Below are positions 1 through 44,801 of a stretch of DNA of 64,000 nucleotides, in pieces. Location of the stretch: positions 152,502 to 216,501 of the IMG/VR virus record IMGVR_UViG_3300043219_000566; one strand, 5' to 3'. A program made the position numbers and the translations under genes. How positions within the stretch are numbered: position 1 is the stretch's first letter; every line of letters begins with the position of its first letter. Below the pieces are notes generated by a model. It was not told where the DNA came from. It searched no databases and saw only the letters and a program-made list of their open reading frames with translations.

Positions 1-797
1 TTGGTATAGCGCTCGCCCAGCGTTTCCTGAGTGACTTCGGGGTCCAGCTGCATCTTCGCAAACGTTTCCTGCAGATCCCTCACCTTGTTGACGGGATCGT
101 CGGGCGAACGCTCGCCGTCCCCCAGCGCCGCCCGCCGCTGGGTGAATTTGGCCCAGGCTTTATCGAGATGCCGGACGTTGTCCTGCAGGGAATTGCTAGC
201 CAGTAGATCGCGGCCCCAGGCCTTCGATAGCTGCTCGTTGGTCACACCCAACGAACGCAGCAACGTGTAAAGCGGAAATTTCGACTGCCCAACCCGTACA
301 TGAAACACGCCGCTCTCCGCGTCCATAAAGACCCGGAAGCCCGGCCCGGAGCCAGGCATGATATTGAAGTGGCTCTCCAGCTCACCAGTCTCTTTCTTGC
401 GCGTGTAAACGCCGGGCTTGAGGCGCATCTGGTTGGCGAGCGTGTACTCGTTACCTCTGTAGATGAACGTGCCGCGGTCGGAGACGTGCGGAACCATCGC
501 AACCCGGCTTCGCCGCTCATCGATCACCTGCCCAGTCGCCTTGTCGATCATGCGCCAGGTGCCAGACAGCGAGCGGTGCATCGTCTTTCCGCCGATGATC
601 GCGCGCTTCTGCCGCTCCAGCCCGGCGGGCTCAGGCTGATCGTAATCGACATCGCCCAGCTCCACGCGGTACTGCGTGTTCTCGATCGGATAGTGATCCT
701 GAGATGATTGACGTACGTTAGCGTAGACGCGCTGGCGCAAGGCGCTCACATCGTCGAAAGCCCGAGTCGTTGGTTCCTTGGTTCCAAGCACATCCAC
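1..797 (-). CDS. rpoB: Phage-encoded DNA-directed RNA polymerase beta subunit-like protein, N-terminal part (runs off window start)
   Basis: Hand translation from GTG at 797: MDVLGTKEPTTRAFDD...RVAMVPHVSDRGTFIYRGNEYTLANQMRLKPGVY...KFPLYTLLRSLG. This matches RpoB motifs IPxMTxxGTFIINGxERVxVSQLxRSPGVY and KIPxxxLLRALG. The frame is open to position 1 and is not in the ORF track. Confidence 0.85.
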   Translation of the reverse strand, partial: MDVLGTKEPTTRAFDDVSALRQRVYANVRQSSQDHYPIENTQYRVELGDVDYDQPEPAGLERQKRAIIGGKTMHRSLSGTWRMIDKATGQVIDERRSRVAMVPHVSDRGTFIYRGNEYTLANQMRLKPGVYTRKKETGELESHFNIMPGSGPGFRVFMDAESGVFHVRVGQSKFPLYTLLRSLGVTNEQLSKAWGRDLLASNSLQDNVRHLDKAWAKFTQRRAALGDGERSPDDPVNKVRDLQETFAKMQLDPEVTQETLGERYT

Positions 798-813
798 AAT
801 TCACCCAACACCT

Positions 814-2007
814 CTACGAGTACGCCGGAGCCCCGTAGCCCGGCCACTTCTGCTGCTGTCGAGGATTATTCAGCAAATAGGCCATCAAGCGCCCCACCAC
901 CGGGCGCTGCTGAGTCATGCGCTGCGTAATCGCGGGCATCATCTGCTGGTAGATCTGGCCCATAACGTGCGGATTACTCAACATGTGCTGAGTTTGCGAG
1001 CGCATGAACTTCGGGTCCTTCATCAGATCCTTTGTCCGCGCAGAAGCCCACCGTCTTCCCAGATCCGTGTTCGTCATCAGCCAACTCAGACCGAGCCCCG
1101 TGCCCGCCGACGTCCCCAAATGACGCAAAGCACGTCCAATTGCAGCGCGCTTATCGTACGCAGTCTTGGATAGATCGCTGTCGCGGTAAGGATTATCGTT
1201 GGGTTTCTCTTCCTCGTCGTCGTCGGTCTGCGTGTGAGACTCCACCTGGGGGCGAGCCATCAAGCTAACCGGGCGCTCGGCCCGCCGACGACGCTGCGCC
1301 TCGCGGTAGGCCTTCAACTCGTCGGCCTGATCGCCCGCGCCGACCATACGCCAGCCGCCGTAAGCCCCCAGCCCAGCCATGATCGCCGCAATTGTTATCG
1401 CAGTAGGCTTAATGCCTCTGCCCACATTGCCGACTGCTTTCACTGCCGACGAACCCGGTATCCAATCCGCGACCTTCCCCAGCGTCTCGTTCAACTCGCC
1501 CTGCTCGTACGCCTCGGCCAAAGCGTGCAAGTCCACCGAGAACTTCAGCGTGCGCTCCTCGGCCAGCGCATCCTCGAACTCCTGCTTGGCTTTGTCCAGC
1601 TCTTGCTGCTCGCGATGACGACGATAGGTCTTCATCAGCTTGCCCATTCCGGCCCAACCAGCAGCTCCCGCCAGCGGCGGGCCGATTACTGCAGCCGGAG
1701 CGAACCAGTCCGGACGTGGCTTACCGTCGAACAACGCCGACTTCACCGGCAACGAGATCTCGTAGCGCGGCTTCTCGTCCAGATCGCGGTCACGTTTGCG
1801 CCGAAGATTCCGCGCTATGTTTCCGTAGACCCCAACCGCGCCACGTGTCGCGGCTCCAGCAGCCAGCATAGCCAGCAGCAACTTGCCGAGATCCTTAGCA
1901 GCGTACTGGTTCACAAAAGTGTCGGCTTGCCCGCGCGTCATAGACGAACGCGACTGCGTCGGCTGCGTCGCAGATGAGCGTGCACAACGTTTCGTTAAAG
2001 CCAGCAT
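814..2007 (-). CDS. Hypothetical virion/head-associated protein with Gly/Ala-rich hydrophobic segments and K-x-A motifs
   Basis: GGAGGT RBS upstream of ATG; motifs VKSA, GKVA, SKTA, DKRA; three hydrophobic G/A-rich stretches each followed by basic residues. Confidence 0.6.
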   Translation of the reverse strand: MLALTKRCARSSATQPTQSRSSMTRGQADTFVNQYAAKDLGKLLLAMLAAGAATRGAVGVYGNIARNLRRKRDRDLDEKPRYEISLPVKSALFDGKPRPDWFAPAAVIGPPLAGAAGWAGMGKLMKTYRRHREQQELDKAKQEFEDALAEERTLKFSVDLHALAEAYEQGELNETLGKVADWIPGSSAVKAVGNVGRGIKPTAITIAAIMAGLGAYGGWRMVGAGDQADELKAYREAQRRRRAERPVSLMARPQVESHTQTDDDEEEKPNDNPYRDSDLSKTAYDKRAAIGRALRHLGTSAGTGLGLSWLMTNTDLGRRWASARTKDLMKDPKFMRSQTQHMLSNPHVMGQIYQQMMPAITQRMTQQRPVVGRLMAYLLNNPRQQQKWPGYGAPAYS

Positions 2008-2011
2008 CCGG

Positions 2012-2470
2012 TTACCTCCGGCGAAGAATACCGGGCTCAGCCTGCGAGTACTGTCGCTGGCTCATGGTGTCGTAGGTAAACACCTCGACCCACTCTAACA
2101 AGATCGTCCAGTTGTCATTGACAAACTGCCGATCGACCGCCGTGATAATAGCACTGCCGCGTTGTGCCATCGAGTAAACCAAAGACGCCACCATCTCGTA
2201 CCGCTTCTTGTCCTCAGCATTTCCGATATTGAACAACTCGCAACGGATACGACCGGCCGTCTGCGGTTGCAAGTGCTCCGGATCATCCTTCCGCAGGTAA
2301 CGAACACCGCGTGCTCGATGCGGTACACCGTCGAGCCCTTGAAAGGTCTGGTACCCATTGTCGTTCTCGCCACTCAGCGAGGAAATTACGCTCGCCAGCG
2401 GATCGCCCGGGTTAACCGAAGCAACCGGCTGTGAGTGGTGACCACTACCCTGTTCTCCGTTCTCGTTCAC
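2012..2470 (-). CDS. Hypothetical protein
   Basis: Co-directional ORF packed between neighbours. Confidence 0.6.
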   Translation of the reverse strand: MNENGEQGSGHHSQPVASVNPGDPLASVISSLSGENDNGYQTFQGLDGVPHRARGVRYLRKDDPEHLQPQTAGRIRCELFNIGNAEDKKRYEMVASLVYSMAQRGSAIITAVDRQFVNDNWTILLEWVEVFTYDTMSQRQYSQAEPGILRRR

Positions 2471-2765
2471 GTCGTGTACGCTCCCTGACCTCTTGAGCCA
2501 GTTGTCGGTACTGAGCCGCCAACTCCTGCGTCTTTAGCTCGCTCACATCGAGGTCGTCGGCCCGCGAAGCATGTCGGGCACCCATGCCCACAAGCGCGCC
2601 GCCAGCCAACGGTAAGCCCAGCGCTAGCGCCAAGCCGCCCTTTCCGAGTGAGCCAAGCAGCGAGTTGGCTACCTTCTCCACCGCTACTTCGATGTCGCCG
2701 GGAGTGAGCCCTATTTCCGCCAGCTTGGTCAAAAATCCGATTTTGAACTGCTCTGCGTTCCGCAC
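2445..2765 (-). CDS. Small hypothetical protein with hydrophobic segment and K-x-A motifs
   Basis: TKLA, EKVA motifs; GGLALALGLPLAGGALVGMGA hydrophobic stretch. Confidence 0.6.
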   Translation of the reverse strand: MRNAEQFKIGFLTKLAEIGLTPGDIEVAVEKVANSLLGSLGKGGLALALGLPLAGGALVGMGARHASRADDLDVSELKTQELAAQYRQLAQEVRERTRRERERRTG

Positions 2766-2874
2766 GGGCTCTGCTCCACAGCTCCAGGCTATTCGCCTGG
2801 GTCCTTACGTCGTAGTCTTCCGCGACTTTACCCTAACCAGCTCCCGACCCCAAATCACGACTCCTCGCTACTAG

Positions 2875-3279
2875 CTACGGACCAGCCGACGAGCTTTCCT
2901 CAGCAGGCGACGCAGCAGCCGACGAGCTTTCCTCAGCAGGCGACGCAGCAGCCGAGGAGCTTTCCTCAGCAGGCGACGCAGCAGCCGAGGAGCTTTCCTC
3001 AGCAGGCGACGCAGCAGCCGAGGAGCTTTCCTCGTCCGGCGGCACCACGGCGATCGGAGGAAGCCGAGACTCAAACTTCGGCTTCACGCCGCTAGGACCG
3101 CCGCCACGTCCGCCGTAGGTCTCGTGCTGGGCCAAATCGTCCAGCGGAATATCCACCCCCGCACCCGGCCGTCCGCCACGGCGCGTATCCGGCAGAATCT
3201 GCCCGATCGGCGTAGCTTCCTGCTGCTGCCCGGTGCGGTCGCTCACTCGCGGCTTAACATGTTCGTCAGAACTACTCAT
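2875..3279 (-). CDS. Hypothetical low-complexity protein with EESSSAAASPA tandem repeats
   Basis: GAGGT RBS + ATG; C-terminal half is encoded by the 33-bp repeat. Confidence 0.65.
   Translation of the reverse strand: MSSSDEHVKPRVSDRTGQQQEATPIGQILPDTRRGGRPGAGVDIPLDDLAQHETYGGRGGGPSGVKPKFESRLPPIAVVPPDEESSSAAASPAEESSSAAASPAEESSSAAASPAEESSSAAASPAEESSSAGP
2883..3033. repeat. 33-bp coding tandem repeat, about 4.6 copies
   Basis: Unit cagccga(c/g)gagctttcctcagcaggcgacgcag, head-to-tail with no spacers. Confidence 0.95.
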
Positions 3280-3293
3280 TTTGCTTACCTCAC

Positions 3294-5051
3294 TTAGCGA
3301 AAGTGTTTGTTCGCGCGCTCAGACTCCATGCGCTTCAACCACGCGCAGTGACCATCCGACCAGTCTTTGTTGTGCATAGGAATGCGCACAGCGAAATCCG
3401 GGTCCATGGCTTGCTCTGTTACCGCGCGCATGGCGCGCAAGTATAGCTGGCCAGGCTCCGACGCGGTTTTCTTCAACTCGTTACCGCTACCCGTCGGTTT
3501 GTAACCCTGCCGCCCGTAAAAACCCGTCAGCTGCTCGTTGTTTAGCGGACGGTCACTAAAGGCGTCGACCTTCAGGCACAACGATTTACCTTTGTGCTCA
3601 CCCTCGGCCACGGCTAGCAGATACTTGGCTAGCCCCTGCCGACGATGAGGCTTGCGTACTTGCAAGCTGCCAACAGTGAGCTTGCCGTTACCGCCCCGCA
3701 TAACTCGTACCGCGCCAGCCAACTTGCCGTCGTCGGTATCAACGTAGTAGCTCTTGAGCGACGGGCGCTCCGAGCGCCGCAACTTGTACCCGTCGGGAGT
3801 GGCCACAGATCGTTTGGTCATGAAGCTCTTGAGCGCTGAGTAAATCAGCGCCGAGCCGATATTCGTGTTCTTCAACCAGCGCGGAGCACCTAGCAGCTTG
3901 GAAACGGCCCAAGCACCCCCGGCCGCCGGGACCGCGTGGACCACGACCTTGGGCAACGCCTTTATCAAAGCTCCGGCGCTGGCTAACCCAGTTCGTCCAA
4001 CACCTTGTTCCTGTCCAGCTTGCGCGACAAGCTGCTTCATCAGCACCCGGTGGCTACCGGGGATCGCCGGGTTCGTAGCGATCTCGTCCATGGCTTGCGC
4101 CACAGGAAACGTCGGGTTCCAAAGCGCCTCGCTGTAGACCATCGGGTCCGCCGCGCCTTCCTTGATCTCCTCGGGCGCTCTGGTCGCGCGTGGGCGGCCC
4201 AACGAAGCTCGCAAGAAGCGCATCATCTCCTGGGGATTCTGCGGCGCACCGCCGGGGTGGAAGAACTTCCCGTAGACTCCCTTGCGCGACAAACCGAGCA
4301 CGGCACCGGGGGTAAGCCCGGCACCGAGCCCAGCAAGAGTGAAGAATCGACGCGCCGCTCGACGGTCTAAGCCAAGCAGACGCGAGAGCAGGGGGGCCGC
4401 CAGATAGCGGCCAGCCAGAGCACCACCAGCCCCGCCAGCAGCCAACCAAGCTGGTACGTTAGTCTTCCAGCTAGGCTTGCCGTACACGGATGGATCATCT
4501 CCGGCAGTTTTCAACGCGCGCAACGAAATCGAAGTCTTCCGCCCGCCCTTCTGGGCAAACAACACCTCGTTGAACGTGTGGGTTCTTCCCTCCAGATCAT
4601 TGCGGTCTGCGTACCGTTGACCGCGCCCCTTCTTGACCCGGGCTACAGTCACGTGCGGCTGGTACTGAGGATGATTCTCCGTGTGCGGCAACAGCCGCTT
4701 GAGCCGCGCGTTGATCCGCCGCAGATCCGGGCTGAAGACCTTCACCACAACCACATCGTCGCCGTCGGTGTGCTTCGAGGCCGGGAAGCACTCGGTGCGC
4801 CCGAAGCGCACGTGGATCGACGGCTCGGCAGTCAGAATAGCGCGCACCGGCTCAGCATTCGCGGTGTGCAGCCCGTATTTCAACGTGATGTGATGACTCG
4901 TCCGTACAGCAGAAACCAGATCCTCAGACCGGATGTCCTGCGCGATTCGCCGTACCGCGGCCGACAACTCCTCCGGCAAGTTGACTTGAGTCGAAGCGAA
5001 CTCGTAAGCCGACTTTTCGATCGCGTCGAGATAGCACAGGAACGAACGCAT
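3294..5051 (-). CDS. Multidomain protein: 2H phosphoesterase (Acb1/gp57B-like) + hydrophobic central region + GNAT acetyltransferase
   Basis: Two HxT motifs (HHITLKYGLH, QPHVTVARV); GNAT motif A (LQVRKPHRRQGLAKYLL) and motif B (LTGFYGRQGY); domains bounded by EKSA, LKTA, TKRS, KKTA. Confidence 0.75.
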   Translation of the reverse strand: MRSFLCYLDAIEKSAYEFASTQVNLPEELSAAVRRIAQDIRSEDLVSAVRTSHHITLKYGLHTANAEPVRAILTAEPSIHVRFGRTECFPASKHTDGDDVVVVKVFSPDLRRINARLKRLLPHTENHPQYQPHVTVARVKKGRGQRYADRNDLEGRTHTFNEVLFAQKGGRKTSISLRALKTAGDDPSVYGKPSWKTNVPAWLAAGGAGGALAGRYLAAPLLSRLLGLDRRAARRFFTLAGLGAGLTPGAVLGLSRKGVYGKFFHPGGAPQNPQEMMRFLRASLGRPRATRAPEEIKEGAADPMVYSEALWNPTFPVAQAMDEIATNPAIPGSHRVLMKQLVAQAGQEQGVGRTGLASAGALIKALPKVVVHAVPAAGGAWAVSKLLGAPRWLKNTNIGSALIYSALKSFMTKRSVATPDGYKLRRSERPSLKSYYVDTDDGKLAGAVRVMRGGNGKLTVGSLQVRKPHRRQGLAKYLLAVAEGEHKGKSLCLKVDAFSDRPLNNEQLTGFYGRQGYKPTGSGNELKKTASEPGQLYLRAMRAVTEQAMDPDFAVRIPMHNKDWSDGHCAWLKRMESERANKHFR

Positions 5052-5606
5052 CTACCTCGGTCTTCCGAAGACCGCCTTGAAGTAGTTAGGAATTCGAGGG
5101 CGCGCGTACTGCGCCGCGTTGTACCCCATCGGCAACATGCCGGGTCCGACAGCGTTCATGTACTGCTGCGCTTGCGGACCTATCCCGGCTATTCTCCGAC
5201 TTCTAGGATCGCCAACCGGAAAGCCGTGAATATTCCTCTCGCCTTGATTCGCGTCCGGCGGCTGACCACCAAACAGTTTTCCGAGTCCCGCCGCGCCCGC
5301 CGCGAAACCAACTGTGGACTTCGGGTACTTGTAGAGCCAGTACGCCGAGCTAAGCGGATTGGGAATTACCCCGGCTACACTGCCACCGAATGCAGCCAAG
5401 TCGGCTTTGCCGCCTCGGAGCATCTTCGGTAGCAGCGGCTCAGGCGTAGCCTTCCCGAACGTCGTCGCGCGCTGCGCCCAGTTCTTAGCAACCGGCGCAG
5501 CCTTTTGCGCTTTAGAAGCCAGCCATGGCAATGCTTTGCTAGCAAAGCGGCCTGCAGACTTGTCCATGGCCAACCGCTCACCAAGTTGGTAAGCGTAGCT
5601 CGGCAT
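5052..5606 (-). CDS. Hypothetical virion-associated protein
   Basis: RBS + ATG; MDKSA motif near N-terminus; G/A-rich. Confidence 0.6.
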   Translation of the reverse strand: MPSYAYQLGERLAMDKSAGRFASKALPWLASKAQKAAPVAKNWAQRATTFGKATPEPLLPKMLRGGKADLAAFGGSVAGVIPNPLSSAYWLYKYPKSTVGFAAGAAGLGKLFGGQPPDANQGERNIHGFPVGDPRSRRIAGIGPQAQQYMNAVGPGMLPMGYNAAQYARPRIPNYFKAVFGRPR

Positions 5607-5615
5607 GAACCACCT

Positions 5616-6036
5616 CTACAGAGTTTTCTTTTCGCTCTGCGCAGGCGGGTCGCCCGCTGGAGCAGGCGCACGCGCCCGCAAGCGGCCTACCAACCCGGCA
5701 GCGCCGATCGGCGCAGAAGCCCCTGCCGCCGCCGCCACTGGTGCCGGGGCTGGCGGCGGAGCAGGCGGCATCGGCATAGAATGCTTGAGCAAGCCCGCCT
5801 GTTTGAGCAACGTGAAATTCGTCACGAGGTTAGCCGCTCTGCGAACCGCGGCAACTTTCTCTTCCTTCTTCATGGGAAGTCCCTTGTGCTTGGTCTTGGC
5901 GAAATCCAACGCATCAGACTTAGAGATCGTCTTCGCCGTCTCGGCGACCTCCTTGGACGGTGGGCTGATGTCGCCCTTCTGCACAGCGTGTACCATCCCG
6001 AAAAAAGCGCTGTTGCTTGCGTGATTTAGCAGGAAC
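5616..6036 (-). pseudogene. DUF3008-like small phage protein with apparent frameshift (or sequence error)
   Basis: AAGGAGGT RBS (6049-6042), then VPAKSRKQQRFF in one frame and FFGMVHAVQKG...DFAKTKHKGLP in the next; frames switch in a T6 run (6001-6006). Confidence 0.6.
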
Positions 6037-6079
6037 AGTACACCTCCTTCCGCAACCGCGCACACGCGGCACAAGCTAC

Positions 6080-6304
6080 CTAGATTTGCGGCCGCGCAAC
6101 ACCCGGCGCAGCCACTGTGGGCTTGCCAGCCTTGGGAGACTTACGCGCCAGAAGCTGACCGGCCAAGTGGCCAAATTGCCCAATCTGGCCTCCGCCCCCG
6201 CCTACCTCGGGTCCAACAACCTTGTCTCCAGCAGGCGGAATCCCGGCAGCCTTCATCAACTCGACGTTGACAACCGCTGCAGCCAAATCATCCATATCAC
6301 TCAT
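6080..6304 (-). CDS. Small hypothetical protein (MKAA motif)
   Basis: GAGGAG RBS before ATG at 6304 (MSDMDD...). Confidence 0.55.
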   Translation of the reverse strand: MSDMDDLAAAVVNVELMKAAGIPPAGDKVVGPEVGGGGGQIGQFGHLAGQLLARKSPKAGKPTVAAPGVARPQI

Positions 6305-6314
6305 GCTCGTCTCC

Positions 6315-7268
6315 TCAAAATCGTTCTCCGCGCTGATGGCGCGCCCACAAATCCGGGAACATGCCCGGCATGTTAGCCTGCAACACATCCGGCCTGCCAC
6401 GATAATCGCGCAGCCACCGATTAAACGAATTTACGCGTTGTTTCGCCGGGTCGGTTTCCGCCGCTTCGCGATTGGCCCGCAGTGTCTTCGCTACGTTACC
6501 GCTAATTTCAGGAATATCGTGCGTTACTGCTTTCGCCGTCGCAAGAGGCGCATAAATCATTCGCTGCTCAAACGACGGACCCGGCAACTCCGCTCCAGCC
6601 ATCGCTAATCCGGCTCGCGCTTTCCAACCTATACCAGGAACGAAATGAAGCGCACCCTGGCCAGCTGCGCCTACTCCTTCACCAACTCGGCGTGACCATG
6701 ACTTTTGCCGCTCTGTGTCGTTGTAAGCATCTACCGCACCATGCAAATCGCCTTTCCATACTTTCTGAAAAAACGGCGACCAGAAAGGTTCATCACCTGA
6801 GTCTTGCGCGCTTTGAGCAGGCTGCTCCTCGCGCATGATCTTCAACCCGCGGCCCAGCTGGCTGCCCAGCGTGTTCCGCGGCATGGACTGCAAACCTTGA
6901 TGTACGATATGGTTAAACGCCATCGCTCCGGCGTTGGGCACCGGCTTCCCCAGATCTGAGTAGTTGAAGCCTCCAGACTTGATCACTGACGGCGGCGTCG
7001 AACGACGTTTCTTCTTCAGCAACATTTTCCAATGCCGCTGCCGATCAGCTTCCGAGACCGACGCACGCTTGCGAACCGACCCGACCAACTGCACGTAGAA
7101 TTCAGCCACGTCGCTGCGCTTGGGCATCGGCTTGCGCCCGGAACGCCAGGGCATGATCTTGTTATGCACCCGGGAATCGATGTCGGCATGCGCCTTGGCC
7201 GATTCACTGGCCGGAACCGTCGCCGAGACGCTGACAGCCGACTTTACCAATTCAAGCAGCGTGAGCAT
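6315..7268 (-). CDS. Hypothetical virion-associated protein
   Basis: VKSA, RKRA, IKSG motifs; directly downstream of the portal-like gene. Confidence 0.6.
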   Translation of the reverse strand: MLTLLELVKSAVSVSATVPASESAKAHADIDSRVHNKIMPWRSGRKPMPKRSDVAEFYVQLVGSVRKRASVSEADRQRHWKMLLKKKRRSTPPSVIKSGGFNYSDLGKPVPNAGAMAFNHIVHQGLQSMPRNTLGSQLGRGLKIMREEQPAQSAQDSGDEPFWSPFFQKVWKGDLHGAVDAYNDTERQKSWSRRVGEGVGAAGQGALHFVPGIGWKARAGLAMAGAELPGPSFEQRMIYAPLATAKAVTHDIPEISGNVAKTLRANREAAETDPAKQRVNSFNRWLRDYRGRPDVLQANMPGMFPDLWARHQRGERF

Positions 7269-7311
7269 GGTGTGATTCTACGTCTGCCGCTCGGCAGCTC
7301 CCAAAAATGCC

Positions 7312-7323
7312 GTAGCGCGCTAC
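7312..7323. repeat. 12-bp palindrome GTAGCGCGCTAC (overlaps portal TAG stop)
   Basis: Exact sequence; one of at least 7 copies. Confidence 0.9.
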
Positions 7324-9134
7324 ATCCCGCCCGGTGCCCCGCCCGGTGCCCCACCCGCCATCTGGGCGATGACCTGGTCCTGACCAACGCTCCGGGCTTG
7401 GCTGCGCATGTTCTGGAGCTTCTGCTTCACCACGGCATGCAGAGTCTCGTCGGTCTGCCGCAACTGGTTGAGCTGGCGTCGTCGCTCACCTTCCGGCATC
7501 GCCAGCAGCTGCTGAGCCATCTGCTCAGCCTGATCGAGCACATCTCCCGGCTGCATCGCCCCTCCGCCACCGCCGCCGCCCGGCATCCCCGGCGCACCAC
7601 CACCAGCAGCCATCGGTGGCATCCCCTGACGGGCCGCGCTGGTTTCGTTCAACCGTCGCTGCATATCCTGCGCCTGCATCTCTTCCTTCTCGATCTTCTG
7701 CTGCTCCTCGCGCAACATGCGTTGCTCGTCGAAGATGCGCCGGATCTCGTCGCGCACGTCGATCCCAAACGGAGCCAACGCCGTCTGATCCGAGATCTTG
7801 TTCGCAGCCGACAACTGCAACCGGACCAACCGCGCTTCCATGTCGTCAGCGCGAGTGACCGGAGTCATACGCCCACGCGCTCGCTCCCAGTTGAAAACCA
7901 TCGAGAGATTTTCGAGCAGCCAGTTTATCCAGTTGTTGAACCCGGCAACCAGGTGCGGCCACGTTGCCTCGAACAGCCGCAAAGCCGGAGGCATGGCCTT
8001 TAGCTCCAACGAGCCCTTGTAGAGATCTGCCGGGACGCCGCACGAATTAAGCAGCTCGTCCAGCGCCACCGTTATCAGCTCGTGCGGTGCAAGCTGATTA
8101 GCCTCGCCGCCCAGCGCCTGATACTCAATTGGAAAAGGCAAACTGTGCATCGCGAGTGGATCACGCCGATGCTCGGCAATCATGCCGCGCACCCGCGACG
8201 AGAAATTGCCCAAGTTAGCGTTCAGCAGCGGATCGACTTTGCCCTGCGGACCGCCCGGACGTCCGGGCGTAACTACGCGCCAGGGCACGATGTAGTCCAT
8301 GGCCAGCGCCTCGTTGTAGCGCTTGAGCACCTGGATGTAGAACCCCTGCTTGAAATTCGACAAGGCCCGTGGGATACCCCAGCCGCGGTTGTGCAGCCCC
8401 GCCAGCGTGTCCTCCTTGAGATGGAACACGATGCCGTCGTTGAACCCGAACAACTGATCCTTCTGGATCGCTTCAATGTATTCCCAGGGGGTGTACTGCA
8501 AATAGAACGGCACGCCACGCTGGATCTGACTTTTGAAATCTTGAGGAATACGCCACAAGTAACGGTGGTCGTGGCTAAGCGGATGGAACAAAATCTCCAT
8601 CTGGTGCGGGCTCCAGCGGATGATCCGCAACCGGTCCTGCTCCATCGAGCGGCGGTCCACCACATCGAACTCGCCGTTGCATTTACACTTCGGGCACTGC
8701 CCGTAGAACTTAAAGCCCCGGAACGTATAGAGCATACGCTCGATCGGACGATCCAACTTGCAGCTCTTGCAACGCAGATAGCGTCGGAACGGAACGAAAA
8801 TGCTCGTAAACGAGTTACCGTAGAACAGAAAATCGAGCCCCACCATCCGCAGTTGCGCAGCGACTCGCAGCGTATCGTCCAGAAATTCGTTGTACTGCTT
8901 CTTGATCTCGTCGGCGACGTCCAGGATCTCGACCTTGGTCAGGAAATACGCACACACGCGCTCCAGCGCCATCCGGTACGTACCGTTGTGCGCCCAGAAC
9001 AACTCACACCAGCGGAGCATGCTCCGCAAGTTGCGAGGCGTGTACATCCCGGAGTAGTCGAGGAAAGGGTCGGGAAACCACTGAACCCCGCCGCTGGACC
9101 CGGACGATGAGTTAGGAACAATGCTATCTGGCAT
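7320..9134 (-). CDS. Portal-like protein with internal CxxC...CxxC zinc ribbon
   Basis: 604 aa; portal-type motifs DFLFYGNSF, WGIP, LLNSCGVPADLYKG; Q/G/M-rich low-complexity C-terminus; CKSC...CPKC insert. Confidence 0.65.
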   Translation of the reverse strand: MPDSIVPNSSSGSSGGVQWFPDPFLDYSGMYTPRNLRSMLRWCELFWAHNGTYRMALERVCAYFLTKVEILDVADEIKKQYNEFLDDTLRVAAQLRMVGLDFLFYGNSFTSIFVPFRRYLRCKSCKLDRPIERMLYTFRGFKFYGQCPKCKCNGEFDVVDRRSMEQDRLRIIRWSPHQMEILFHPLSHDHRYLWRIPQDFKSQIQRGVPFYLQYTPWEYIEAIQKDQLFGFNDGIVFHLKEDTLAGLHNRGWGIPRALSNFKQGFYIQVLKRYNEALAMDYIVPWRVVTPGRPGGPQGKVDPLLNANLGNFSSRVRGMIAEHRRDPLAMHSLPFPIEYQALGGEANQLAPHELITVALDELLNSCGVPADLYKGSLELKAMPPALRLFEATWPHLVAGFNNWINWLLENLSMVFNWERARGRMTPVTRADDMEARLVRLQLSAANKISDQTALAPFGIDVRDEIRRIFDEQRMLREEQQKIEKEEMQAQDMQRRLNETSAARQGMPPMAAGGGAPGMPGGGGGGGAMQPGDVLDQAEQMAQQLLAMPEGERRRQLNQLRQTDETLHAVVKQKLQNMRSQARSVGQDQVIAQMAGGAPGGAPGGM

Positions 9135-9139
9135 AGTTA

Positions 9140-9331
9140 CTATCCGTGACGATTGACAAACCGCGGATTCGAGCCGAGTTCACTCAGCGACTGCTGGCAA
9201 CGGGCTTGCTTCTCCGACGCGCACCGTGGGCACTTCGCCGCGCCGTCTACCAGCACGTTCGCAGTCCCGGCGCAATCAGGCGTGCTGCAAGGCGTCACAG
9301 ATGGTTCAACCACGTTCTTCTTGTTCATCAT
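9140..9331 (-). CDS. Small Cys-rich hypothetical protein
   Basis: GGAGG RBS; C-x4-C...CPRC followed by EKQA. Confidence 0.5.
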   Translation of the reverse strand: MMNKKNVVEPSVTPCSTPDCAGTANVLVDGAAKCPRCASEKQARCQQSLSELGSNPRFVNRHG

Positions 9332-10145
9332 GCTCAACAGCCTCCGGCTGCTCATCTGCGCGGGGCAAAACAACCAGGGTACCGACGCCTGGGATAACTG
9401 TCGTCAGTCCAAAATGCCGAACGGTGAACTCCTTGAAGCTACTGTCGTCCATCGGCACCTTGAGCTTAAACGTCTGGTCCATAGGCGGTTCGTACGCCAA
9501 GTCTCCGTCACCTACCCCGGCAGTATACAAAAGCGCGATGTGTTTCTCGCAAATAATAACGTCCGTCGCCTTAGAGCGGAAGCGACCAAACCCTCCCTCC
9601 AAAACGACCAGCACGAACAACTTAGCGCTTTCTTCCCCCGGCGATTTACGCTCGTCCTCCCGGTCGGGCGACAACGCGGCGCGCAACGTAGCCGCCACGT
9701 TCGGATCAGATAACGCAGCCGCTAGCGCCGTCGCGTCGACCGGCGGCGTAGAAACGACCGCTGGACCAGGAACCGCGACTGGCGTAGTTGTTGCCGGAGC
9801 TGATGGTTGATCACCCACGGGAGCCTCCCTTGCGGGTCGTCCGCTAGTTGGTAGAGGTGGTAACGCACGCGGCACAGCTTGCGCGCAACTCGGCTCGGAA
9901 CGCGATGCCGCCGGATCAGGCGCTGAAGCAGGTTGAACCGGCGACGCGACTGCCTGGCGAACAGGCTCGCCGTCCATCGGCGGATCATCGATCGGCGGCG
10001 GCAAGATCGTCGCGCCCGTGAGCCCCGGCCGACCACCGAAACTGTCCTCGAACGCGTTGGGCACCTTGGTGCCTACGGCCCCAACTTCGACTTCGGAAAC
10101 GACTTCTTTCTTCCAGCCTTGCCCGATGTCTTTGAACTCGGTCAT
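9306..10145 (-). CDS. Hypothetical protein with Pro/Ala-rich linker
   Basis: GGAGGAG RBS + ATG; 279 aa. Confidence 0.7.
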   Translation of the reverse strand: MTEFKDIGQGWKKEVVSEVEVGAVGTKVPNAFEDSFGGRPGLTGATILPPPIDDPPMDGEPVRQAVASPVQPASAPDPAASRSEPSCAQAVPRALPPLPTSGRPAREAPVGDQPSAPATTTPVAVPGPAVVSTPPVDATALAAALSDPNVAATLRAALSPDREDERKSPGEESAKLFVLVVLEGGFGRFRSKATDVIICEKHIALLYTAGVGDGDLAYEPPMDQTFKLKVPMDDSSFKEFTVRHFGLTTVIPGVGTLVVLPRADEQPEAVEHDEQEERG

Positions 10146-38847: not shown

Positions 38848-39572
38848 GCGATTACCCACTCGCTGCCGTAGATCGCTCGGTACTGTTCCCAGACCCCGGC
38901 TCGCAACTGCTCGTCGAACTCGGGCAACAACTGCCCGGGATTGCGCCGGGAGCTATCCCACTTGTTGAATATCTCCCGCGGCGCGGCATCGAGCGTGCGG
39001 GCATTGCTCTGGGCATACTCGTAACGTACGATCCGCCCTCCAGATTCCAGCGCGTCCTGAGCAAACAAGCTCCATTCCCGAATCCAGAAGCTGATACTCG
39101 CTGCCGCATTTACCCCGCCAGTATTAGCGACGAACTCGAAGTGGCGTTTGGGCTTGGTCAAGCTGATGTACTGGTGCACCGGATGCCGAACAATGCAGAT
39201 CAGATCTCGGATCACGTCTCGGTTGCGGGAGAAGAAACCAAACATGGGAGCCCGACTGAACATCGTGACTTTGCGCGGACGACCCTTCATCCAGTGACAG
39301 TAGGCCAGCAAGTTCTGCTCGATGGTTAACCGCTCGTCGCACTGGTAACCAGTACGCCGGTGGAAACCCGCGATTGAAGCCGCAGACGGCCGCGCCGCGT
39401 AACCACGGTGGTCTAACTGCTGATCGAACTTGGTAGCCGACTTTTGTTGCTGCGGAAAGTACCACGGCAACCAATAGGTCTCCGGACGGTAGTGACCGGT
39501 GTAACGTCGCTCAAGCCGTCGTTTCAGCCACGTCGAGCCCGAACCCCCGTAGCAAGCGAAAGCGTACTTCAC
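38844..39572 (-). CDS. Sulfotransferase-fold protein
   Basis: CYGGSGSTWL, VRHPVHQYIS, IVRYE; GTGA-coupled start. Confidence 0.65.
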   Translation of the reverse strand: MKYAFACYGGSGSTWLKRRLERRYTGHYRPETYWLPWYFPQQQKSATKFDQQLDHRGYAARPSAASIAGFHRRTGYQCDERLTIEQNLLAYCHWMKGRPRKVTMFSRAPMFGFFSRNRDVIRDLICIVRHPVHQYISLTKPKRHFEFVANTGGVNAAASISFWIREWSLFAQDALESGGRIVRYEYAQSNARTLDAAPREIFNKWDSSRRNPGQLLPEFDEQLRAGVWEQYRAIYGSEWVIA

Positions 39573-40303
39573 AGCATCTCCCTTCCGAAGCGCCGACGCA
39601 ATTGTCGCGCAAACCGCGGCAGCAGCAGCGCGTACGGAAACGGGCGCGGTGACGACGGAATCTTCCACCGCGCAAGATACCAGGCCAAGATAAACTCGGG
39701 TACGCCGCAGCGATACTTGCGAATCGCACCCAGAATCTCGTCACTCAGCAGCTCGGAGTACAACGCAGCATAAACCCGCATCTGCGCGGGACGCCCTGCC
39801 AGAAACGTGTCGTTGATAGCGTAGCCCGCGCTCGGCAAGCCCTTCACCTTGAAGTTCGAGTAGCACAGCTCCGTGCGAGTCCACGCCAGCAACTTATCCC
39901 AGTCGAGACAGAACGTCGGGTACCAGTCGAAACGGCAACGCAGAATGATGTCGTACTCGTCGAGGTTCCCGATCAACTCGAAAGCACTTTGAATCGTCAA
40001 ATACTGGGCAAATAGCCCGGTCTTGATGCTGAAGCGCTTGCGTTGAAACGGCAGTTGTTCGACCTGTGCGGCTTTGGCCGTGACCTCAGCCGCGACCGCG
40101 TCCCAGGAATGAAGCACCAGCTTACGTGGGCTGTACGTATCCGCAAGCGCCGCCCGGCCCTGCTCACAGCTGTAACCCTCGTCAAACGTGTCCCAGGCAT
40201 AGACATACGTATCGACCTCCTGATCACCGAGCATCTTCCGCCAGGCCGGGGCCGTCTTGGCGAACGTCCGCGGCATACCGCCGAACACCACAGCTACTTT
40301 CAT
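39569..40303 (-). CDS. Putative glycosyl/phospho-transferase-like protein of phage glycan loci
   Basis: MKVAVVFGGMPRTF...YDIILRCRFD...INDTFLAG...PE; ATGA-coupled to the GDPD-like gene. Confidence 0.55.
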   Translation of the reverse strand: MKVAVVFGGMPRTFAKTAPAWRKMLGDQEVDTYVYAWDTFDEGYSCEQGRAALADTYSPRKLVLHSWDAVAAEVTAKAAQVEQLPFQRKRFSIKTGLFAQYLTIQSAFELIGNLDEYDIILRCRFDWYPTFCLDWDKLLAWTRTELCYSNFKVKGLPSAGYAINDTFLAGRPAQMRVYAALYSELLSDEILGAIRKYRCGVPEFILAWYLARWKIPSSPRPFPYALLLPRFARQLRRRFGREML

Positions 40304-40749
40304 GACGTCGCTCCAATGTAACGAGCTGGGTAATCCGAGCAAATCGCGTAGCAGCCCCGCAGCTCATCCGGCGTGTAATTGGCCTGCTCGGGCAATACCG
40401 CGATGCTGCGCTGGGTCAACTGCGCACCGGTCCGCGTCCACACAAGCCCGCACGAAGTCAACGCTACCGCATCCTGGTCGTGAAAGAACACGTGTGCGTA
40501 ATTGAGCAGACGGCAAAGCGCTTCGACATTCTTGGCATGAACCCAAATGTCAGGCTGAGCCAGCCAAAATAGCTCAATGGGCTCCGACGGGCCGTCATGC
40601 CCTAGCCACAGCTCACCCTCATGCCACCAAACGTCGACCTCGACCTGAAAGCCCGCCGCACGCGCAGATTCCAGATACTCAAGCCGATTCTCGCGATTTA
40701 CCACCCGTCCAGCTACATTTCCGCGATGGCTGATGGGTCTTTGATCCAT
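40300..40749 (-). CDS. Minimal glycerophosphodiester phosphodiesterase (GDPD)-like protein
   Basis: ISHRGN, EN, VEVDVW, LGHD, HAKN, ICSDY. Confidence 0.8.
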   Translation of the reverse strand: MDQRPISHRGNVAGRVVNRENRLEYLESARAAGFQVEVDVWWHEGELWLGHDGPSEPIELFWLAQPDIWVHAKNVEALCRLLNYAHVFFHDQDAVALTSCGLVWTRTGAQLTQRSIAVLPEQANYTPDELRGCYAICSDYPARYIGATS

Positions 40750-41336
40750 TTCCGTACCACCGTAATGCCCCAGTCATCGTCGCGCTCCTTGAAGAACTGG
40801 TTCACGTCGAACAGCTCGCGATCGATAGCCGGGAGCAATGCAACCGGACCGGGATGAAAATTCGTGTCATGCAGCACAATAACGCCGAACGGCGAGACAA
40901 ACTCGGCGTAGCGCCAATCGCGCACTACCTGATCGACCGAGTGCCAACCGTCGATGTGTAAGAAGTCGATCACCCGCTCACCGCATAGCTCCTCGACCTT
41001 GGCCATCACGCGCTCTAGGTCCGAGGAGTCGCAGCGCAACGTATGCACGTTGGCGCGCTCGATGTAGCACTTGTCCTGCGTGTCCACGCCCAGGTAAAGC
41101 ACGTCGGCGGGCAATTCCACCAGCAGCACCTGCGTACCGGATGCACCGTCCCCGTGATTGGATACGCCAATTTCCAAAACCAAACGCCTCTGTCCCGCTA
41201 GCGAACGAAATGCTTCGCGCAACACGCTCTGATCGCGCGTAGAGTACACTCTGGAAATGCGCTTCTTAGCCGCAGCAAAATTGGGCGGACGATCCTTGTC
41301 ACCGTTGCTCGGAACATAGGTTAATCCGTAACTCAT
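40713..41336 (-). CDS. Class I SAM-dependent methyltransferase (Methyltransf_24-like)
   Basis: VLEIGV, YLGVD, CDS, IDFLHIDGWHS, GVIVLHDT. Confidence 0.85.
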   Translation of the reverse strand: MSYGLTYVPSNGDKDRPPNFAAAKKRISRVYSTRDQSVLREAFRSLAGQRRLVLEIGVSNHGDGASGTQVLLVELPADVLYLGVDTQDKCYIERANVHTLRCDSSDLERVMAKVEELCGERVIDFLHIDGWHSVDQVVRDWRYAEFVSPFGVIVLHDTNFHPGPVALLPAIDRELFDVNQFFKERDDDWGITVVRKWIKDPSAIAEM

Positions 41337-42529: not shown

Positions 42530-42839
42530 GCTTGTCTCCCGGCCGCGAAGGGATCTTGACCACGATCAGCTCGCAGTCCTCGTGGAAGACGGGGTCCGCT
42601 AGCTCAAAGGGATGCAGGACAAATACGTCACCGGCCTGCAACTCGCGGTCTTGGATACGCATTCTTCCACGGATGAGGTAGTTGACCTCTACGGATTTCT
42701 TGTGATAGTGCCTCGGCCACTCCTCGCCTTGCCGATGCCGCAGATACCCGACCTCGCAGTCGGCAGTCTGAAAGGCCGCAGGCTCGAAGTTGCCTACGAA
42801 CCAGCCGCCTTCCATCGTCTTGATGTGGCGAATGTCCAT
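42516..42839 (-). CDS. Cupin-fold protein
   Basis: GGWFVGNFEP, HYHKKSVEVNYLIRG, GDVFVL, VVKIPS. Confidence 0.85.
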   Translation of the reverse strand: MDIRHIKTMEGGWFVGNFEPAAFQTADCEVGYLRHRQGEEWPRHYHKKSVEVNYLIRGRMRIQDRELQAGDVFVLHPFELADPVFHEDCELIVVKIPSRPGDKHVVS

Positions 42840-42840
42840 G

Positions 42841-44477: not shown

Positions 44478-44794
44478 AGCTTTATCCGTGCCCAGTGTTC
44501 TTCTGGCTCGTCACATTCGATCACGAGCATGCGAACAACCAGAGCCGGAATGGAAAAAGGCACAAAGCCCCTCAGCCCTCGGCGGCCCATGTTGATTTCC
44601 CAAAACTGCAGCTGCCCCCACTCACCATTCGGCTCGCCGTCTATCGCTCCTAAGAACCGCACCAGTTGCCCTTGGCCCTGAGACCCGAGTTTTCGGAAAG
44701 CATCGATGAACACCGGAACCACGCGGCCAATGTTGGATTCGTCGACAACTTGTCCATCGTACTCGGTAGATAACATCACCACGTACTCCTTCAT
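44474..44794 (-). CDS. Hypothetical protein
   Basis: Stop coupled (ATGA) to the glycosyltransferase start. Confidence 0.55.
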   Translation of the reverse strand: MKEYVVMLSTEYDGQVVDESNIGRVVPVFIDAFRKLGSQGQGQLVRFLGAIDGEPNGEWGQLQFWEINMGRRGLRGFVPFSIPALVVRMLVIECDEPEEHWARIKL

Positions 44795-44801
44795 CACCCG
44801 C

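What the first reader, a model, noticed from the sequence alone, without database searches (positions are those of the whole stretch)
814..9331. Recurrent K-x-A/S motif across head-module proteins: candidate prohead-protease cleavage code
Seen: otherwise unrelated proteins around the portal share a [hydrophobic/E/D/T]-K-x-[A/S/G] motif, typically 8-18 residues from the N-terminus or between domains: VKSA, GKVA, SKTA, DKRA (814..2007); TKLA, EKVA (2445); EKSA, LKTA, TKRS, KKTA (3294); DKSA (5052); EKVA, LKQA, LKHS (5616); MKAA (6080); VKSA, RKRA, IKSG (6315); EKQA (9140). Established: T4 gp21 and phiKZ gp175 process many head proteins at short shared motifs. Inference: this is the equivalent targeting/maturation signal, and it marks internal-head (ejected) proteins. 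Many of these have G/A-rich hydrophobic helices.
Basis: partly seen in the sequence, partly recalled or inferred. Interest (0 to 1): 0.65.

Follow-up and report, generated by a model that had tools for sequence, protein, structure and literature searches.

The report
Lysine-based head-protease cleavage motif
A short signal, hydrophobic-x-Lys-x-Ala, marks the capsid protein, the capsid-maturation protease and the portal-side cargo proteins of this uncultured 216-kb phage and its distant relatives, and is most likely the cutting code of that protease, which uses lysine where T4 and phiKZ use glutamate.

Summary

A narrower motif is real: [L/I/M/V/F]-x-K-x-A, often followed by S or A.
- In the region it occurs 11 times against 3.9 expected (P=0.001).
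- It sits 9-18 residues from the N-terminus in five proteins.
- It lies at or within a few residues of five low-confidence linkers that separate the parts of the 585-aa protein at 3294-5051.
- Most of these sites are conserved in orthologues from seven related contigs.

The signal is strongest outside the window, 10-18 kb upstream, with 34 sites against 6.2 expected. That block holds a protease with the T4 gp21/herpesvirus assemblin fold, the major capsid protein and scaffold-like proteins.

The same block-restricted enrichment recurs in Salmonella phage Arash, Vibrio phage D181 and an IMG/VR genome. L.K.A was the top-scoring pattern in an unbiased enumeration in three of the four genomes.

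The cleavage-code idea is therefore supported by computation only, with a corrected motif, and no cleavage has been shown. That the motif specifically marks ejected proteins is not shown.

The parts
7320..9134 (-). Portal protein (604 aa; public gene calls use a 566-aa start). No enrichment of the motif.
   Evidence: tblastn to the Arash gp204 portal and Vibrio phage D181. 658+ homologues. No [LIVMF]-x-K-x-A.
6315..7268 (-). 317-aa protein, first gene after the portal. It has an N-terminal peptide MLTLLELVK9SA.
   Evidence: No family hit. The N-terminal L-x-[IV]-K-x-A is kept in 7 of 7 orthologues.
7236..7250 (-).
6080..6304 (-). Small ORF (74 aa from the internal ATG), MSDMDDLAAAVVNVELMK18AAG. 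Conserved in relatives; missed by my gene caller.
   Evidence: Orthologues read ELMKSA, ELFKLS, ELAKMS, ELIKMA. Site at 6245-6259.
5616..6074 (-). DUF3008-like protein (FGMVHAVQKG), start codon uncertain. Candidate site LLK91QA at 5796-5810.
Evidence: PHROG hits. LLKQA is kept in 5 of 6 aligned orthologues.
5052..5606 (-). 184-aa G/A-rich protein with N-terminal site AMDK16SA at 5553-5567.
   Evidence: Orthologues keep K-x-[A/S] in the first 10-25 residues: AMEKPA, GMDKSS, LRKEA, IEKSA, IAKRA.
3294..5051 (-). 585-aa multi-part cargo protein. Order: N-terminal helix, 2H phosphoesterase (about 19-176), G/A-rich hydrophobic helices, conserved but poorly modelled middle part (about 300-410), GNAT acetyltransferase (about 422-530), tail.
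   Evidence: Pfam 2_5_RNA_ligase2 37.3 bits (cut-off 27), Acetyltransf_7 and Acetyltransf_1 above cut-off. AF2 model.
5007..5021 (-).
   Evidence: K-x-[A/S] is kept in 10 of the 12 other family members (two lack this N-terminus). Next to pLDDT<50 at 14-16.
4503..4517 (-).
   Evidence: K-x-A within +/-2 columns in the 12 family members that cover this part. Starts the pLDDT<50 stretch 181-193.
4155..4169 (-).
   Evidence: K297 is invariant in 13 sequences. Inside pLDDT<50 stretch 285-313.
3807..3821 (-).
   Evidence: GFM-x-K-x-[A/S/G] is kept in about 10 of 13. Inside pLDDT<50 stretch 393-415.
3462..3476 (-).
   Evidence: E-[LM]-x-K-x-A is kept in the close GNAT-bearing orthologues (own, P0226, P0228, P0233; looser in P0227). 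L039 has SKMA after its own GNAT. pLDDT<50 from 532.
2875..3279 (-). 134-aa S/A/E-rich protein with 33-bp tandem repeats. No motif.
   Evidence: TRF: 2883-3033, period 33, 4.6 copies, 99% match..
2445..2765 (-). 106-aa protein. FLTK14LA (2718-2732) is partly conserved; VEK31VA (2667-2681) is conserved. It is followed by a G/A-rich hydrophobic segment.
   Evidence: In relatives the same module is fused to the C-terminus of other cargo (BLAST matches to L037_16003 and L041_15289).
2012..2470 (-). 152-aa conserved protein without the motif.
814..2007 (-). 397-aa G/A-rich protein. PVK89SA (1735-1749) is conserved within +/-1 register in 4 of 5 orthologues. LSK281TA (1159-1173) is partial, DKRA partial, and LGK178VA is not conserved.
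1..797 (-). 5' part of a 1465-aa RNA polymerase gene (beta fused to the N-terminal half of beta'), likely packaged in virions. Motif at chance (3 against 1.7).
   Evidence: Pfam Rpb2_6, Rpb1_1 and Rpb1_2. The Arash orthologue gp206 is the most detected virion protein (PMC10585845)..
9140..9373 (-). Small conserved Cys-rich (zinc-ribbon-like) ORF upstream of the portal.

Best explanation
The recurring element is a five- to six-residue motif, [L/M/I/V/F]-x-K-x-A-(S/A/G), with S or G tolerated in place of A at some sites. It is most likely the recognition and cleavage site of the phage's own capsid-maturation protease. That protease is a 457-aa protein with the T4 gp21/herpesvirus assemblin fold, encoded at genome 136318-137691, 15 kb upstream of the window.

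Inferred sequence of events:
1. The protease, the capsid protein, scaffold-like proteins and a set of portal-side cargo proteins co-assemble into the prohead.
2. The protease cuts at the motif.
3. Cutting removes a 30-residue peptide from the capsid protein.
4. It frees and then fragments the protease itself, at sites on both flanks of its catalytic domain and in its helical C-terminal half.
5. It chops the multi-site scaffold-like proteins.
7. It cuts the 585-aa protein at 3294-5051 into separate pieces: a 2H phosphoesterase, hydrophobic segments and a GNAT acetyltransferase.

By analogy with T4 ([L/I]-x-E, cut after E), the cut is probably right after the lysine, with hydrophobic P3 and Lys P1. 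This is an inference; a cut after the alanine is not excluded.

Shown: the motif, its restriction to this module, its conservation, its position in low-confidence linkers, and the protease fold.
Inferred: that the motif is cleaved, by this protease, and where.
For: 1. Specificity within the genome.
- Unbiased lysine-context test: among 467 lysines of 33 proteins around the protease and portal, L at K-2 occurs 79 times against 38.7 expected (p=1e-9) and A at K+2 96 times against 52.7 (p=5e-9). The other 206 proteins show nothing.
- By gene block: 27 against 4.4, 11 against 4.0 and 8 against 3.6 in the three blocks from the protease to the portal, and about expectation elsewhere.
- Genes 141-152: 34 against 6.2 +/- 2.4, with a maximum of 16 in 5,000 shuffles.

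2. De novo enumeration. Among 48,000 three-residue patterns, L.K.A ranks first in the own module (28 against 4.2, p=2e-14), the Arash block (20 against 1.7) and the G001 block (19 against 2.7). It ranks third in D181, behind two sub-patterns of the same motif.

3. Controls. K to R, K to E, the reversed pattern and a non-hydrophobic residue at K-2 are not enriched.

4. Replication in distant relatives (portal 26-60% identical, GC 45-53%). Enrichment appears only in the protease block: Arash 35 against 6.3, D181 34 against 5.3, G001 34 against 6.9.

5. Canonical positions.
- Capsid protein N-terminus: own AIVK30NA, G001 VLQKNA, Arash GLVK27EA, D181 GLTK27EA.
- Protease flanks: K35/A37 are at least 90% conserved, and a site at K217-220 occurs in about 64 of 79 homologues.
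- 105 protease homologues carry 680 sites against 100 expected.

6. Protease fold. AF2 pLDDT 86.8. Best structural match is T4 gp21 (5jbl_A), Z 10.4, rmsd 2.9 A over 126 residues, followed by herpesvirus proteases at Z 9.7-7. PHROG head maturation protease, E 3e-5. H97 and S148 are invariant.

7. Sites fall in low-confidence linkers. Protease K220 lies in 220-228 (pLDDT<50). The five sites of gene 3294-5051 lie in or within about four residues of stretches 14-16, 181-193, 285-313, 393-415 and 532-564.

8. Orthologue conservation in the region. Flank preferences learned from Arash and D181 score the region's sites above sites elsewhere in the genome (MWU p=0.0013).

9. Complex prediction. The protease domain with residues 1-40 of gene 6315-7268 scored 0.62 against a best control of 0.01. 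That mark was reached by 51 of 78 solved complexes and 2 of 108 mismatched pairs. Runs agree in at least 51% of contacts and the partner pLDDT is at least 38. The peptide lies on the invariant surface N70, N72, D74, H97, S148-D156, with a lysine touching D74 and D156.
Against: - There is no experimental cleavage data for this phage or any relative. The Arash virion MS is reported only as coverage per protein and used trypsin, which would mask a cut after lysine. Several multi-site Arash proteins show 100% coverage.
- In the complex model the docked residues are 34-40 (VHNK37IMP), not the LVK9SA motif, so it does not confirm the register.
- Some motif occurrences lie inside the folded protease domain (columns of K78, K90 and residue 138). 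These may reflect fold conservation rather than cleavage.
- Only 17 of 49 own sites are conserved in strict register in G001.
- The G001 orthologue of 3294-5051 lacks the N-terminal peptide.
- Two sites in 814-2007 and one in 6315-7268 are not conserved.
- Mapping of H97 and S148 onto the catalytic residues of gp21 was not verified residue by residue.
- Gene starts come from my own ORF caller, so N-terminal distances depend on start-codon choice. Orthologue N-termini agree for most.
Confidence: 0.72

Rival explanations
1. The motif is a docking or capsid-targeting signal, not a cleavage site. It would be a short linear motif by which cargo, scaffold and capsid proteins bind a common partner inside the prohead (protease, scaffold or inner shell surface), with cleavage absent or occurring elsewhere.
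For: - The same restricted distribution and conservation would be expected.
- The N-terminal peptides are predicted helical (residues 2-14 of gene 3294-5051), like the T4 capsid targeting sequence.
- Arash multi-site proteins were detected with up to 100% coverage.
- The complex model docked a different segment.
Against: - Sites lie next to low-confidence linkers between folded parts, on both flanks of the protease catalytic domain, and in tandem arrays of 5-9 per scaffold-like protein. This fits processing better than docking.
- In T4, targeting and cleavage coexist, so this rival is partly compatible with the main explanation.
Confidence: 0.13
2. Chance or composition: K-x-A/S/G is simply frequent in alanine-rich proteins of a 60% GC genome and has no function.
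For: Several listed instances are not conserved.
Against: The refined motif is enriched 4-7 fold only in this module, in four genomes of different GC content. It is the top pattern of an unbiased enumeration in three of them, and negative controls are flat.
Confidence: 0.03
3. Shared structural repeat. L-x-K-x-A would reflect alanine-rich amphipathic or coiled-coil helices of paralogous scaffold-like proteins, conserved by descent and unrelated to any protease.
For: - Highest densities are in helical, repeat-like proteins (for example ELVKEAS and ELEKAAAV repeats in Arash and D181).
- Some occurrences lie within helices or inside the protease fold.
Against: - The motif also occurs in non-homologous proteins (capsid protein, protease, 2H/GNAT protein, small proteins) at N-termini and in low-confidence linkers.
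- K to R and K to E variants, which would fit helices equally well, are not enriched.
- The neighbourhood of a homologous protease in mycobacteriophage Alice shows no clear enrichment (7 against about 5).
Confidence: 0.06

Closest known systems
T4 gp21 prohead protease and its [L/I]-x-E cleavage motif, with the N-terminal capsid targeting sequences of internal proteins
   Same: - Best structural match of the protease domain (Z 10.4).
- Hydrophobic residue two positions before a charged residue.
- Motif in the capsid protein N-terminal peptide, in the protease itself, in scaffold-like proteins, and after short N-terminal peptides of unrelated head cargo proteins.
   Different: - The charged residue is Lys, not Glu.
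- There is an additional, nearly obligatory Ala two residues after it.
- No detectable sequence similarity to gp21.
- The protease carries a 240-aa helical C-terminal half.
- Cleavage is unproven here.
phiKZ gp175 / SPN3US gp245 and the [S/A/G]-x-E motif of giant-phage head and ejection proteins (PMC10052503, PMC5694885)
   Same: - Large phage with a packaged multisubunit RNA polymerase.
- Many head proteins carry the motif.
- Several motifs per propeptide.
- N-terminal propeptides and self-cleaving protease.
   Different: - Different motif, with Lys in place of Glu and a hydrophobic rather than a small residue at the upstream position.
- Different lineage: only about 15 proteins are shared even with Arash, and no phiKZ-like hits were seen.
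- Cargo here includes a multi-part enzyme protein that appears cut at the borders between its parts.
Herpesvirus assemblin, (V/L)-x-A then S (own knowledge)
   Same: Same fold class (Z 7-9.7). Hydrophobic residue upstream, with Ala followed by Ser/Ala in the motif.
   Different: The spacing differs, because the Lys is an extra conserved position. If the cut were after Ala, the register would be K-x-A then S/A, with Lys at P3. This is unresolved.
Salmonella phage Arash (OQ632216; PMC10585845) and Vibrio phages D181/D148/D69
   Same: Nearest cultured relatives. They share portal, capsid protein, protease, RNA polymerase genes and gene order, and show the same motif enrichment in the protease block.
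   Different: - Only 26-41% identity in the core proteins.
- Arash has a single small gene between portal and RNA polymerase, where this phage has about ten.
- No protease or cleavage motif is annotated or discussed for them.

Membership tests
Capsid maturation (prohead) protease of the assemblin / T4 gp21 fold | Characteristic fold of the catalytic domain | tested here: met
   AF2 model pLDDT 86.8. 5jbl_A Z 10.4, rmsd 2.9 A over 126 aa. Herpesvirus proteases Z 9.7-7. Foldseek E-values alone were weak (0.08).
Capsid maturation (prohead) protease of the assemblin / T4 gp21 fold | Catalytic Ser and His conserved | tested here: inconclusive
   H97 and S148 are invariant in 79 homologues and lie in the predicted peptide-binding surface. 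Equivalence to the gp21 catalytic residues was not checked residue by residue.
Capsid maturation (prohead) protease of the assemblin / T4 gp21 fold | Gene placed between portal and major capsid protein, next to scaffold-like genes | tested here: met
   The gene order portal ... protease ... capsid protein is conserved in the own genome, G001, Arash and D181.
Shared prohead-protease cleavage motif (as in T4, phiKZ, SPN3US) | Short motif over-represented in head proteins relative to the rest of the proteome | tested here: met
Shared prohead-protease cleavage motif (as in T4, phiKZ, SPN3US) | Motif present in the capsid protein N-terminal peptide and flanking the protease domain | tested here: met
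Shared prohead-protease cleavage motif (as in T4, phiKZ, SPN3US) | Mature protein ends map to the motif | not testable with these tools
   No peptide-level data are available for any relative.
Shared prohead-protease cleavage motif (as in T4, phiKZ, SPN3US) | Glu at the cut position ([L/I]-x-E or [S/A/G]-x-E) | tested here: not met
   [LIVMF]-x-E-x-A is not enriched. The conserved charged residue is Lys. It works like these systems but uses a different code.
T4-type capsid targeting sequence | Short N-terminal peptide ending in the protease motif on unrelated cargo proteins | tested here: met
   K9, K13, K14, K16 and K18 in five region proteins. 10 of 35 module proteins against 6 of 204 others. 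Conserved in orthologues.
T4-type capsid targeting sequence | Peptide sufficient to target a protein into the capsid | not testable with these tools
   Needs a fusion experiment in a cultured relative.
2H phosphoesterase superfamily (domain of gene 3294-5051) | Pfam match above cut-off and two H-x-T/S motifs | tested here: met
   PF13563, 37.3 bits against a cut-off of 27. HITL and HVTV are in the sequence.
Acb1 anti-CBASS family | Pfam PF23474 above its gathering score | tested here: not met
   18.6 bits against a cut-off of 27. One orthologue (P0231) carries a precomputed PF23474 hit.

The most novel reading that the evidence does not exclude
A widespread, uncultured lineage of about 200-kb phages (658+ portal homologues) uses a lysine-specific assemblin-fold protease. 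Besides maturing the shell, the protease would cut multi-part proteins into free enzymes inside the capsid: 2H phosphoesterase, GNAT acetyltransferase, and in relatives LigD-type phosphoesterase and metallophosphatase. Each enzyme is tethered to G/A-rich membrane-type helices. The enzymes would be injected together with a packaged RNA polymerase as ready-made counter-defence cargo.
Probability: 0.3. Interest if true: 0.75.

Novelty: new variant of a known kind. Interest (0 to 1): 0.6.

Why it matters
Capsid-maturation proteases with a readable cleavage code are known in detail for few phages (T4, phiKZ/SPN3US). A second, charge-reversed code (Lys instead of Glu) in a large environmental lineage would have three uses.

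- It would let head and cargo proteins be predicted from sequence in hundreds of otherwise unannotated 200-kb phage genomes.
- It would give a natural pair of related folds for studying how specificity at the cut position evolves.
- It would point to enzymes that are probably delivered into the host with the DNA.

The idea is directly testable in two cultured relatives, Salmonella phage Arash and Vibrio phage D181. One practical warning follows: tryptic proteomics would hide a cut after lysine.

Tried and rejected
I did not stop there, because three N-terminal K-S-A peptides looked non-random.
- Megablast of the region against phage genomes found no match.
- Sequence searches of the PDB with the portal, and with a profile of the protease family, found nothing useful.
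- Pfam and PHROGs gave nothing for most region proteins.
- Foldseek E-values for the protease model were all above 0.05, although assemblins topped the list. The fold call rests on the VIA-align second look.
- The Arash paper and its supplement hold no peptide-level MS, so no mature ends could be read.
- The neighbourhood of the protease homologue in mycobacteriophage Alice shows no clear enrichment (7 against about 5 expected). The code is therefore not a property of every phage with a related protease.
- The complex prediction passed its mark but docked residues 34-40 rather than the motif. I use it only as support for the location of the binding cleft and for a lysine-accepting acidic pocket, not as confirmation of the site.
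- The word search for homologues of 3294-5051 gave only 9 proteins, so that alignment is shallow and the model is of middling confidence (pLDDT 66).
- Literature searches found no report of a Lys-based prohead protease motif or of this lineage's protease. This is not proof of absence.

Full report
**Setting.** The window is the last 64 kb of a single 216,501-bp virus record. The record is 60% GC and nearly all genes are on the minus strand. Gene calls are from my own codon-score ORF caller (239 genes), so start codons are provisional.

- portal (7320-9134);
- a 317-aa protein (6315-7268);
- a small ORF (6080-6304);
- a DUF3008-like protein (5616-6074);
- a 184-aa protein (5052-5606);
- a 585-aa protein with 2H phosphoesterase and GNAT domains (3294-5051);
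- a repeat protein (2875-3279);
- three more proteins (2445-2765, 2012-2470, 814-2007);
- a 1465-aa RNA polymerase gene that fuses beta to the N-terminal half of beta'.

The nearest cultured relatives are Salmonella phage Arash and Vibrio phages D181, D148 and D69 (portal 26-28% identical). In Arash the orthologous polymerase is the most detected protein of the virion preparation (PMC10585845).

**The observation as stated.** All 19 tetrapeptides are there. The motif as defined accepts V, G, S, D, T, E, L, K, M, R or I before the lysine, so it is effectively K-x-[A/S/G]. In nine region proteins per-protein shuffles give K-x-A 16 against 17.3 +/- 3.8, K-x-[AS] 24 against 25.6 and K-x-[ASG] 32 against 38.2.

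**What is really there.** K-S-A tripeptides cluster between 24 kb upstream of the window and position 7300, and most have a hydrophobic residue two positions before the lysine.
- A test of every lysine context in that segment (33 proteins, 467 lysines) gave only two strong signals (p below 1e-8). L at K-2 occurs 79 times against 38.7 expected (p=1e-9). A at K+2 occurs 96 times against 52.7 (p=5e-9). A weak V excess at K-1 was the only other entry below 0.01. The other 206 proteins show neither.
- By blocks of eight genes, [LIVMF]-x-K-x-A is at expectation across the genome except from the head genes to the portal. There the counts are 27 against 4.4, 11 against 4.0 and 8 against 3.6.
- For genes 141-152, shuffling gives 34 against 6.2 +/- 2.4, with a maximum of 16 in 5,000 shuffles.
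- Replacing K by R or E, reversing the pattern, or requiring a non-hydrophobic residue at K-2 abolishes the enrichment. In the region K-x-A without the hydrophobic residue is depleted (6 against 11.9), which explains why the loose motif looks random.
- Enumerating all three-residue patterns in six spacings (48,000 patterns) puts L.K.A first in the own module (28 against 4.2, p=2e-14).

**Replication.** The pattern was fixed on this genome and then counted in three others.
- Arash (53% GC): 35 against 6.3 in the block holding the protease homologue.
- D181 (45% GC): 34 against 5.3.
- IMG/VR genome G001 (45% GC, 107 shared proteins): 34 against 6.9, plus 9 against 3.4 in its portal-side block.
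- The rest of each genome is mostly near expectation. A few other blocks show smaller excesses, the largest being D181 170384-175111 (9 against 1.8).

L.K.A is again the top pattern in Arash and G001 and third in D181, behind K.AS and EK.A, which are parts of the same motif. The logo from Arash and D181 is (G/E)-[L/M/I]-[E/V]-K-x-A-[S/A]. The neighbourhood of a more distant protease homologue in mycobacteriophage Alice shows no clear enrichment.

**Who carries it.** The densest carriers surround a 457-aa protein at genome 136318-137691.
- It matches PHROG head maturation protease families and has 105 unnamed homologues.
- Its AF2 model (pLDDT 86.8) has a confident domain at 41-215, a low-confidence linker at 220-250 and a helical C-terminal half.
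- The domain aligns best with T4 gp21 (Z 10.4, rmsd 2.9 A, 126 residues), then with herpesvirus proteases (Z 9.7-7).
- H97 and S148 are invariant. K35 and A37 are at least 90% conserved.
- The 105 homologues hold 680 motif sites against 100 expected, and none has fewer than three. A site precedes the domain in 66 of 79 aligned homologues, and one follows it (own K217-220, inside the pLDDT<50 stretch) in about 64 of 79.
- The major capsid protein (PHROG major head protein) carries the motif 27-30 residues from its N-terminus in all four genomes.
- Neighbouring proteins of unknown function carry 3-9 sites each.

This is the layout known for T4 gp21 and for phiKZ gp175/SPN3US gp245. In those phages the motif marks the capsid propeptide, the protease's own ends, the scaffold or inner-body proteins and N-terminal propeptides of cargo (PMC10052503; T4 from established knowledge).

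- Five proteins have the motif 9-18 residues from the start: K9, K13, K14, K16, and K18 for the small ORF. That is 4 of 9 called region proteins against 6 of 204 proteins outside the module (P=3e-4). For the whole module it is 10 of 35 (P=6e-6).
- Portal-flanking loci from six further relatives (GC 40-59%, portal 51-80% identical) and G001 keep the gene order.
- The N-terminal L-x-[IV]-K-x-A of the first gene after the portal is kept in 7 of 7. The small ORF's ELMKAA is kept in 5 of 5. LLKQA of the DUF3008-like protein is kept in 5 of 6. The N-terminal site of 5052-5606 is kept in most. VEKVA of 2445-2765 is kept in 3 of 4.
- In the 585-aa protein, 13 family members share five K-x-[A/S/G] sites. 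These are K13 before the 2H domain, K181 after it, the invariant K297, K413 after the invariant F-M, and K528 after GNAT.
- In the AF2 model these five sites lie in or within about four residues of the pLDDT<50 stretches 14-16, 181-193, 285-313, 393-415 and 532-564, which separate the more confidently modelled parts.
- GKVA (814-2007) and RKRA (6315-7268) are not conserved. Several others are partial, and EKQA (9140) is unsupported.
Six of the eight such segments with at least 42% G+A lie in genes 147-164.

**Mechanism and its limits.** The best reading is that [L/M/I/V/F]-x-K-x-A(S/G) is the cleavage code of this protease. No experiment exists, and the only proteome of a relative used trypsin and reports coverage only.

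A complex prediction of the protease domain with the first 40 residues of gene 6315-7268 passed its mark.
- The score was 0.62 against a best control of 0.01.
- That mark was reached by 51 of 78 solved complexes and 2 of 108 mismatched pairs.
- Runs agree in at least 51% of contacts, and the partner pLDDT is at least 38.
- The peptide was placed on the invariant surface N70, N72, D74, H97 and S148-D156.
- The docked segment was residues 34-40, with K37 against D74 and D156, not the LVK9SA motif.

This supports the cleft and a lysine-accepting acidic pocket, but not the specific site. The cut is probably after the lysine: that gives hydrophobic P3 and charged P1, the T4 spacing with reversed charge. 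A cut after the alanine (assemblin-like, Ala then Ser) is not excluded.

**Rivals.** A non-cleaved docking motif cannot be excluded and may coexist with cleavage. Chance is excluded for the refined motif. A shared helical repeat fits poorly with the K-specificity, the unrelated carriers and the linker positions.

**Ejected proteins.** The motif also marks shell, protease and scaffold-like proteins, so at most it marks proteins present in the prohead. Three observations make delivery into the host plausible but unproven: the position between the portal and a probably packaged polymerase, the enzyme domains, and the membrane-type helices.

**Novelty.** I found no report of a lysine-based prohead protease motif or of this lineage's protease. 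I rate it a new variant of a known kind.

No reads tools, alternative codes or restricted sequences were used.

Noticed in passing
window 1-797 (gene continues to genome 148901); second gene at genome 144921-146774: The multisubunit RNA polymerase is encoded by two genes inside the structural module. One is a 1465-aa fusion of beta with the N-terminal half of beta' (Rpb2_6 + Rpb1_1 + Rpb1_2). The other is a 617-aa C-terminal half of beta' (Rpb1_5). This split differs from the phiKZ-type splits. The Arash orthologues are among the most detected virion proteins.
   Followed up: partly
window 3294-5051 and loci L037, L039, L041: The cargo genes between portal and polymerase are modular. The same hydrophobic middle part and the 2445-2765 module are joined to different enzymes in relatives (2H phosphoesterase, GNAT, LigD_N phosphoesterase, metallophosphatase; up to 995 aa). 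In G001 the 2445-2765 module is fused to the C-terminus of the 2H protein.
   Followed up: partly
window 2883-3033: Near-perfect 33-bp tandem repeat (4.6 copies, 99% match) encoding SPAEESSSAAA units in the 134-aa protein 2875-3279. The gene has no motif and only one weak BLAST match to a small G001 protein.
   Followed up: no
window 6080-6304 and 9140-9373: Two small conserved ORFs that simple gene calling misses or mis-starts. One is a 74-aa protein after the first post-portal gene. The other is a Cys-rich, zinc-ribbon-like protein just upstream of the portal, conserved in four relatives.
   Followed up: partly
relatives' homologues (P0011, P0067, P0084, P0194; L040 RNA polymerase and ribonucleotide reductase): Inteins or homing-endonuclease domains (Hint, Intein_splicing, LAGLIDADG_3) interrupt the protease, portal, polymerase and ribonucleotide reductase genes in several relatives.
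   Followed up: no
protease family alignment A1 (own residues 158, 161, 172): Three invariant cysteines (C158, C161, C172) sit inside the protease domain next to the predicted substrate cleft. This could be a metal site or a disulphide. I did not check whether T4 gp21 or the herpesvirus proteases have an equivalent.
   Followed up: no
window 39569-44881 and G001 182692-191149: A second, weaker excess of the motif far from the head genes: 5 against 1.4 in the own genome, including an N-terminal pair in gene 39569-40342, and 11 against 4.5 in G001. It may mark further virion proteins or be chance.
   Followed up: no
window 7320-9134: The portal family is very large (658+ homologues at E<=1e-20, many on 170-216-kb contigs) and entirely unnamed in public sources. 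The lineage is common in metagenomes but essentially unstudied.
   Followed up: partly
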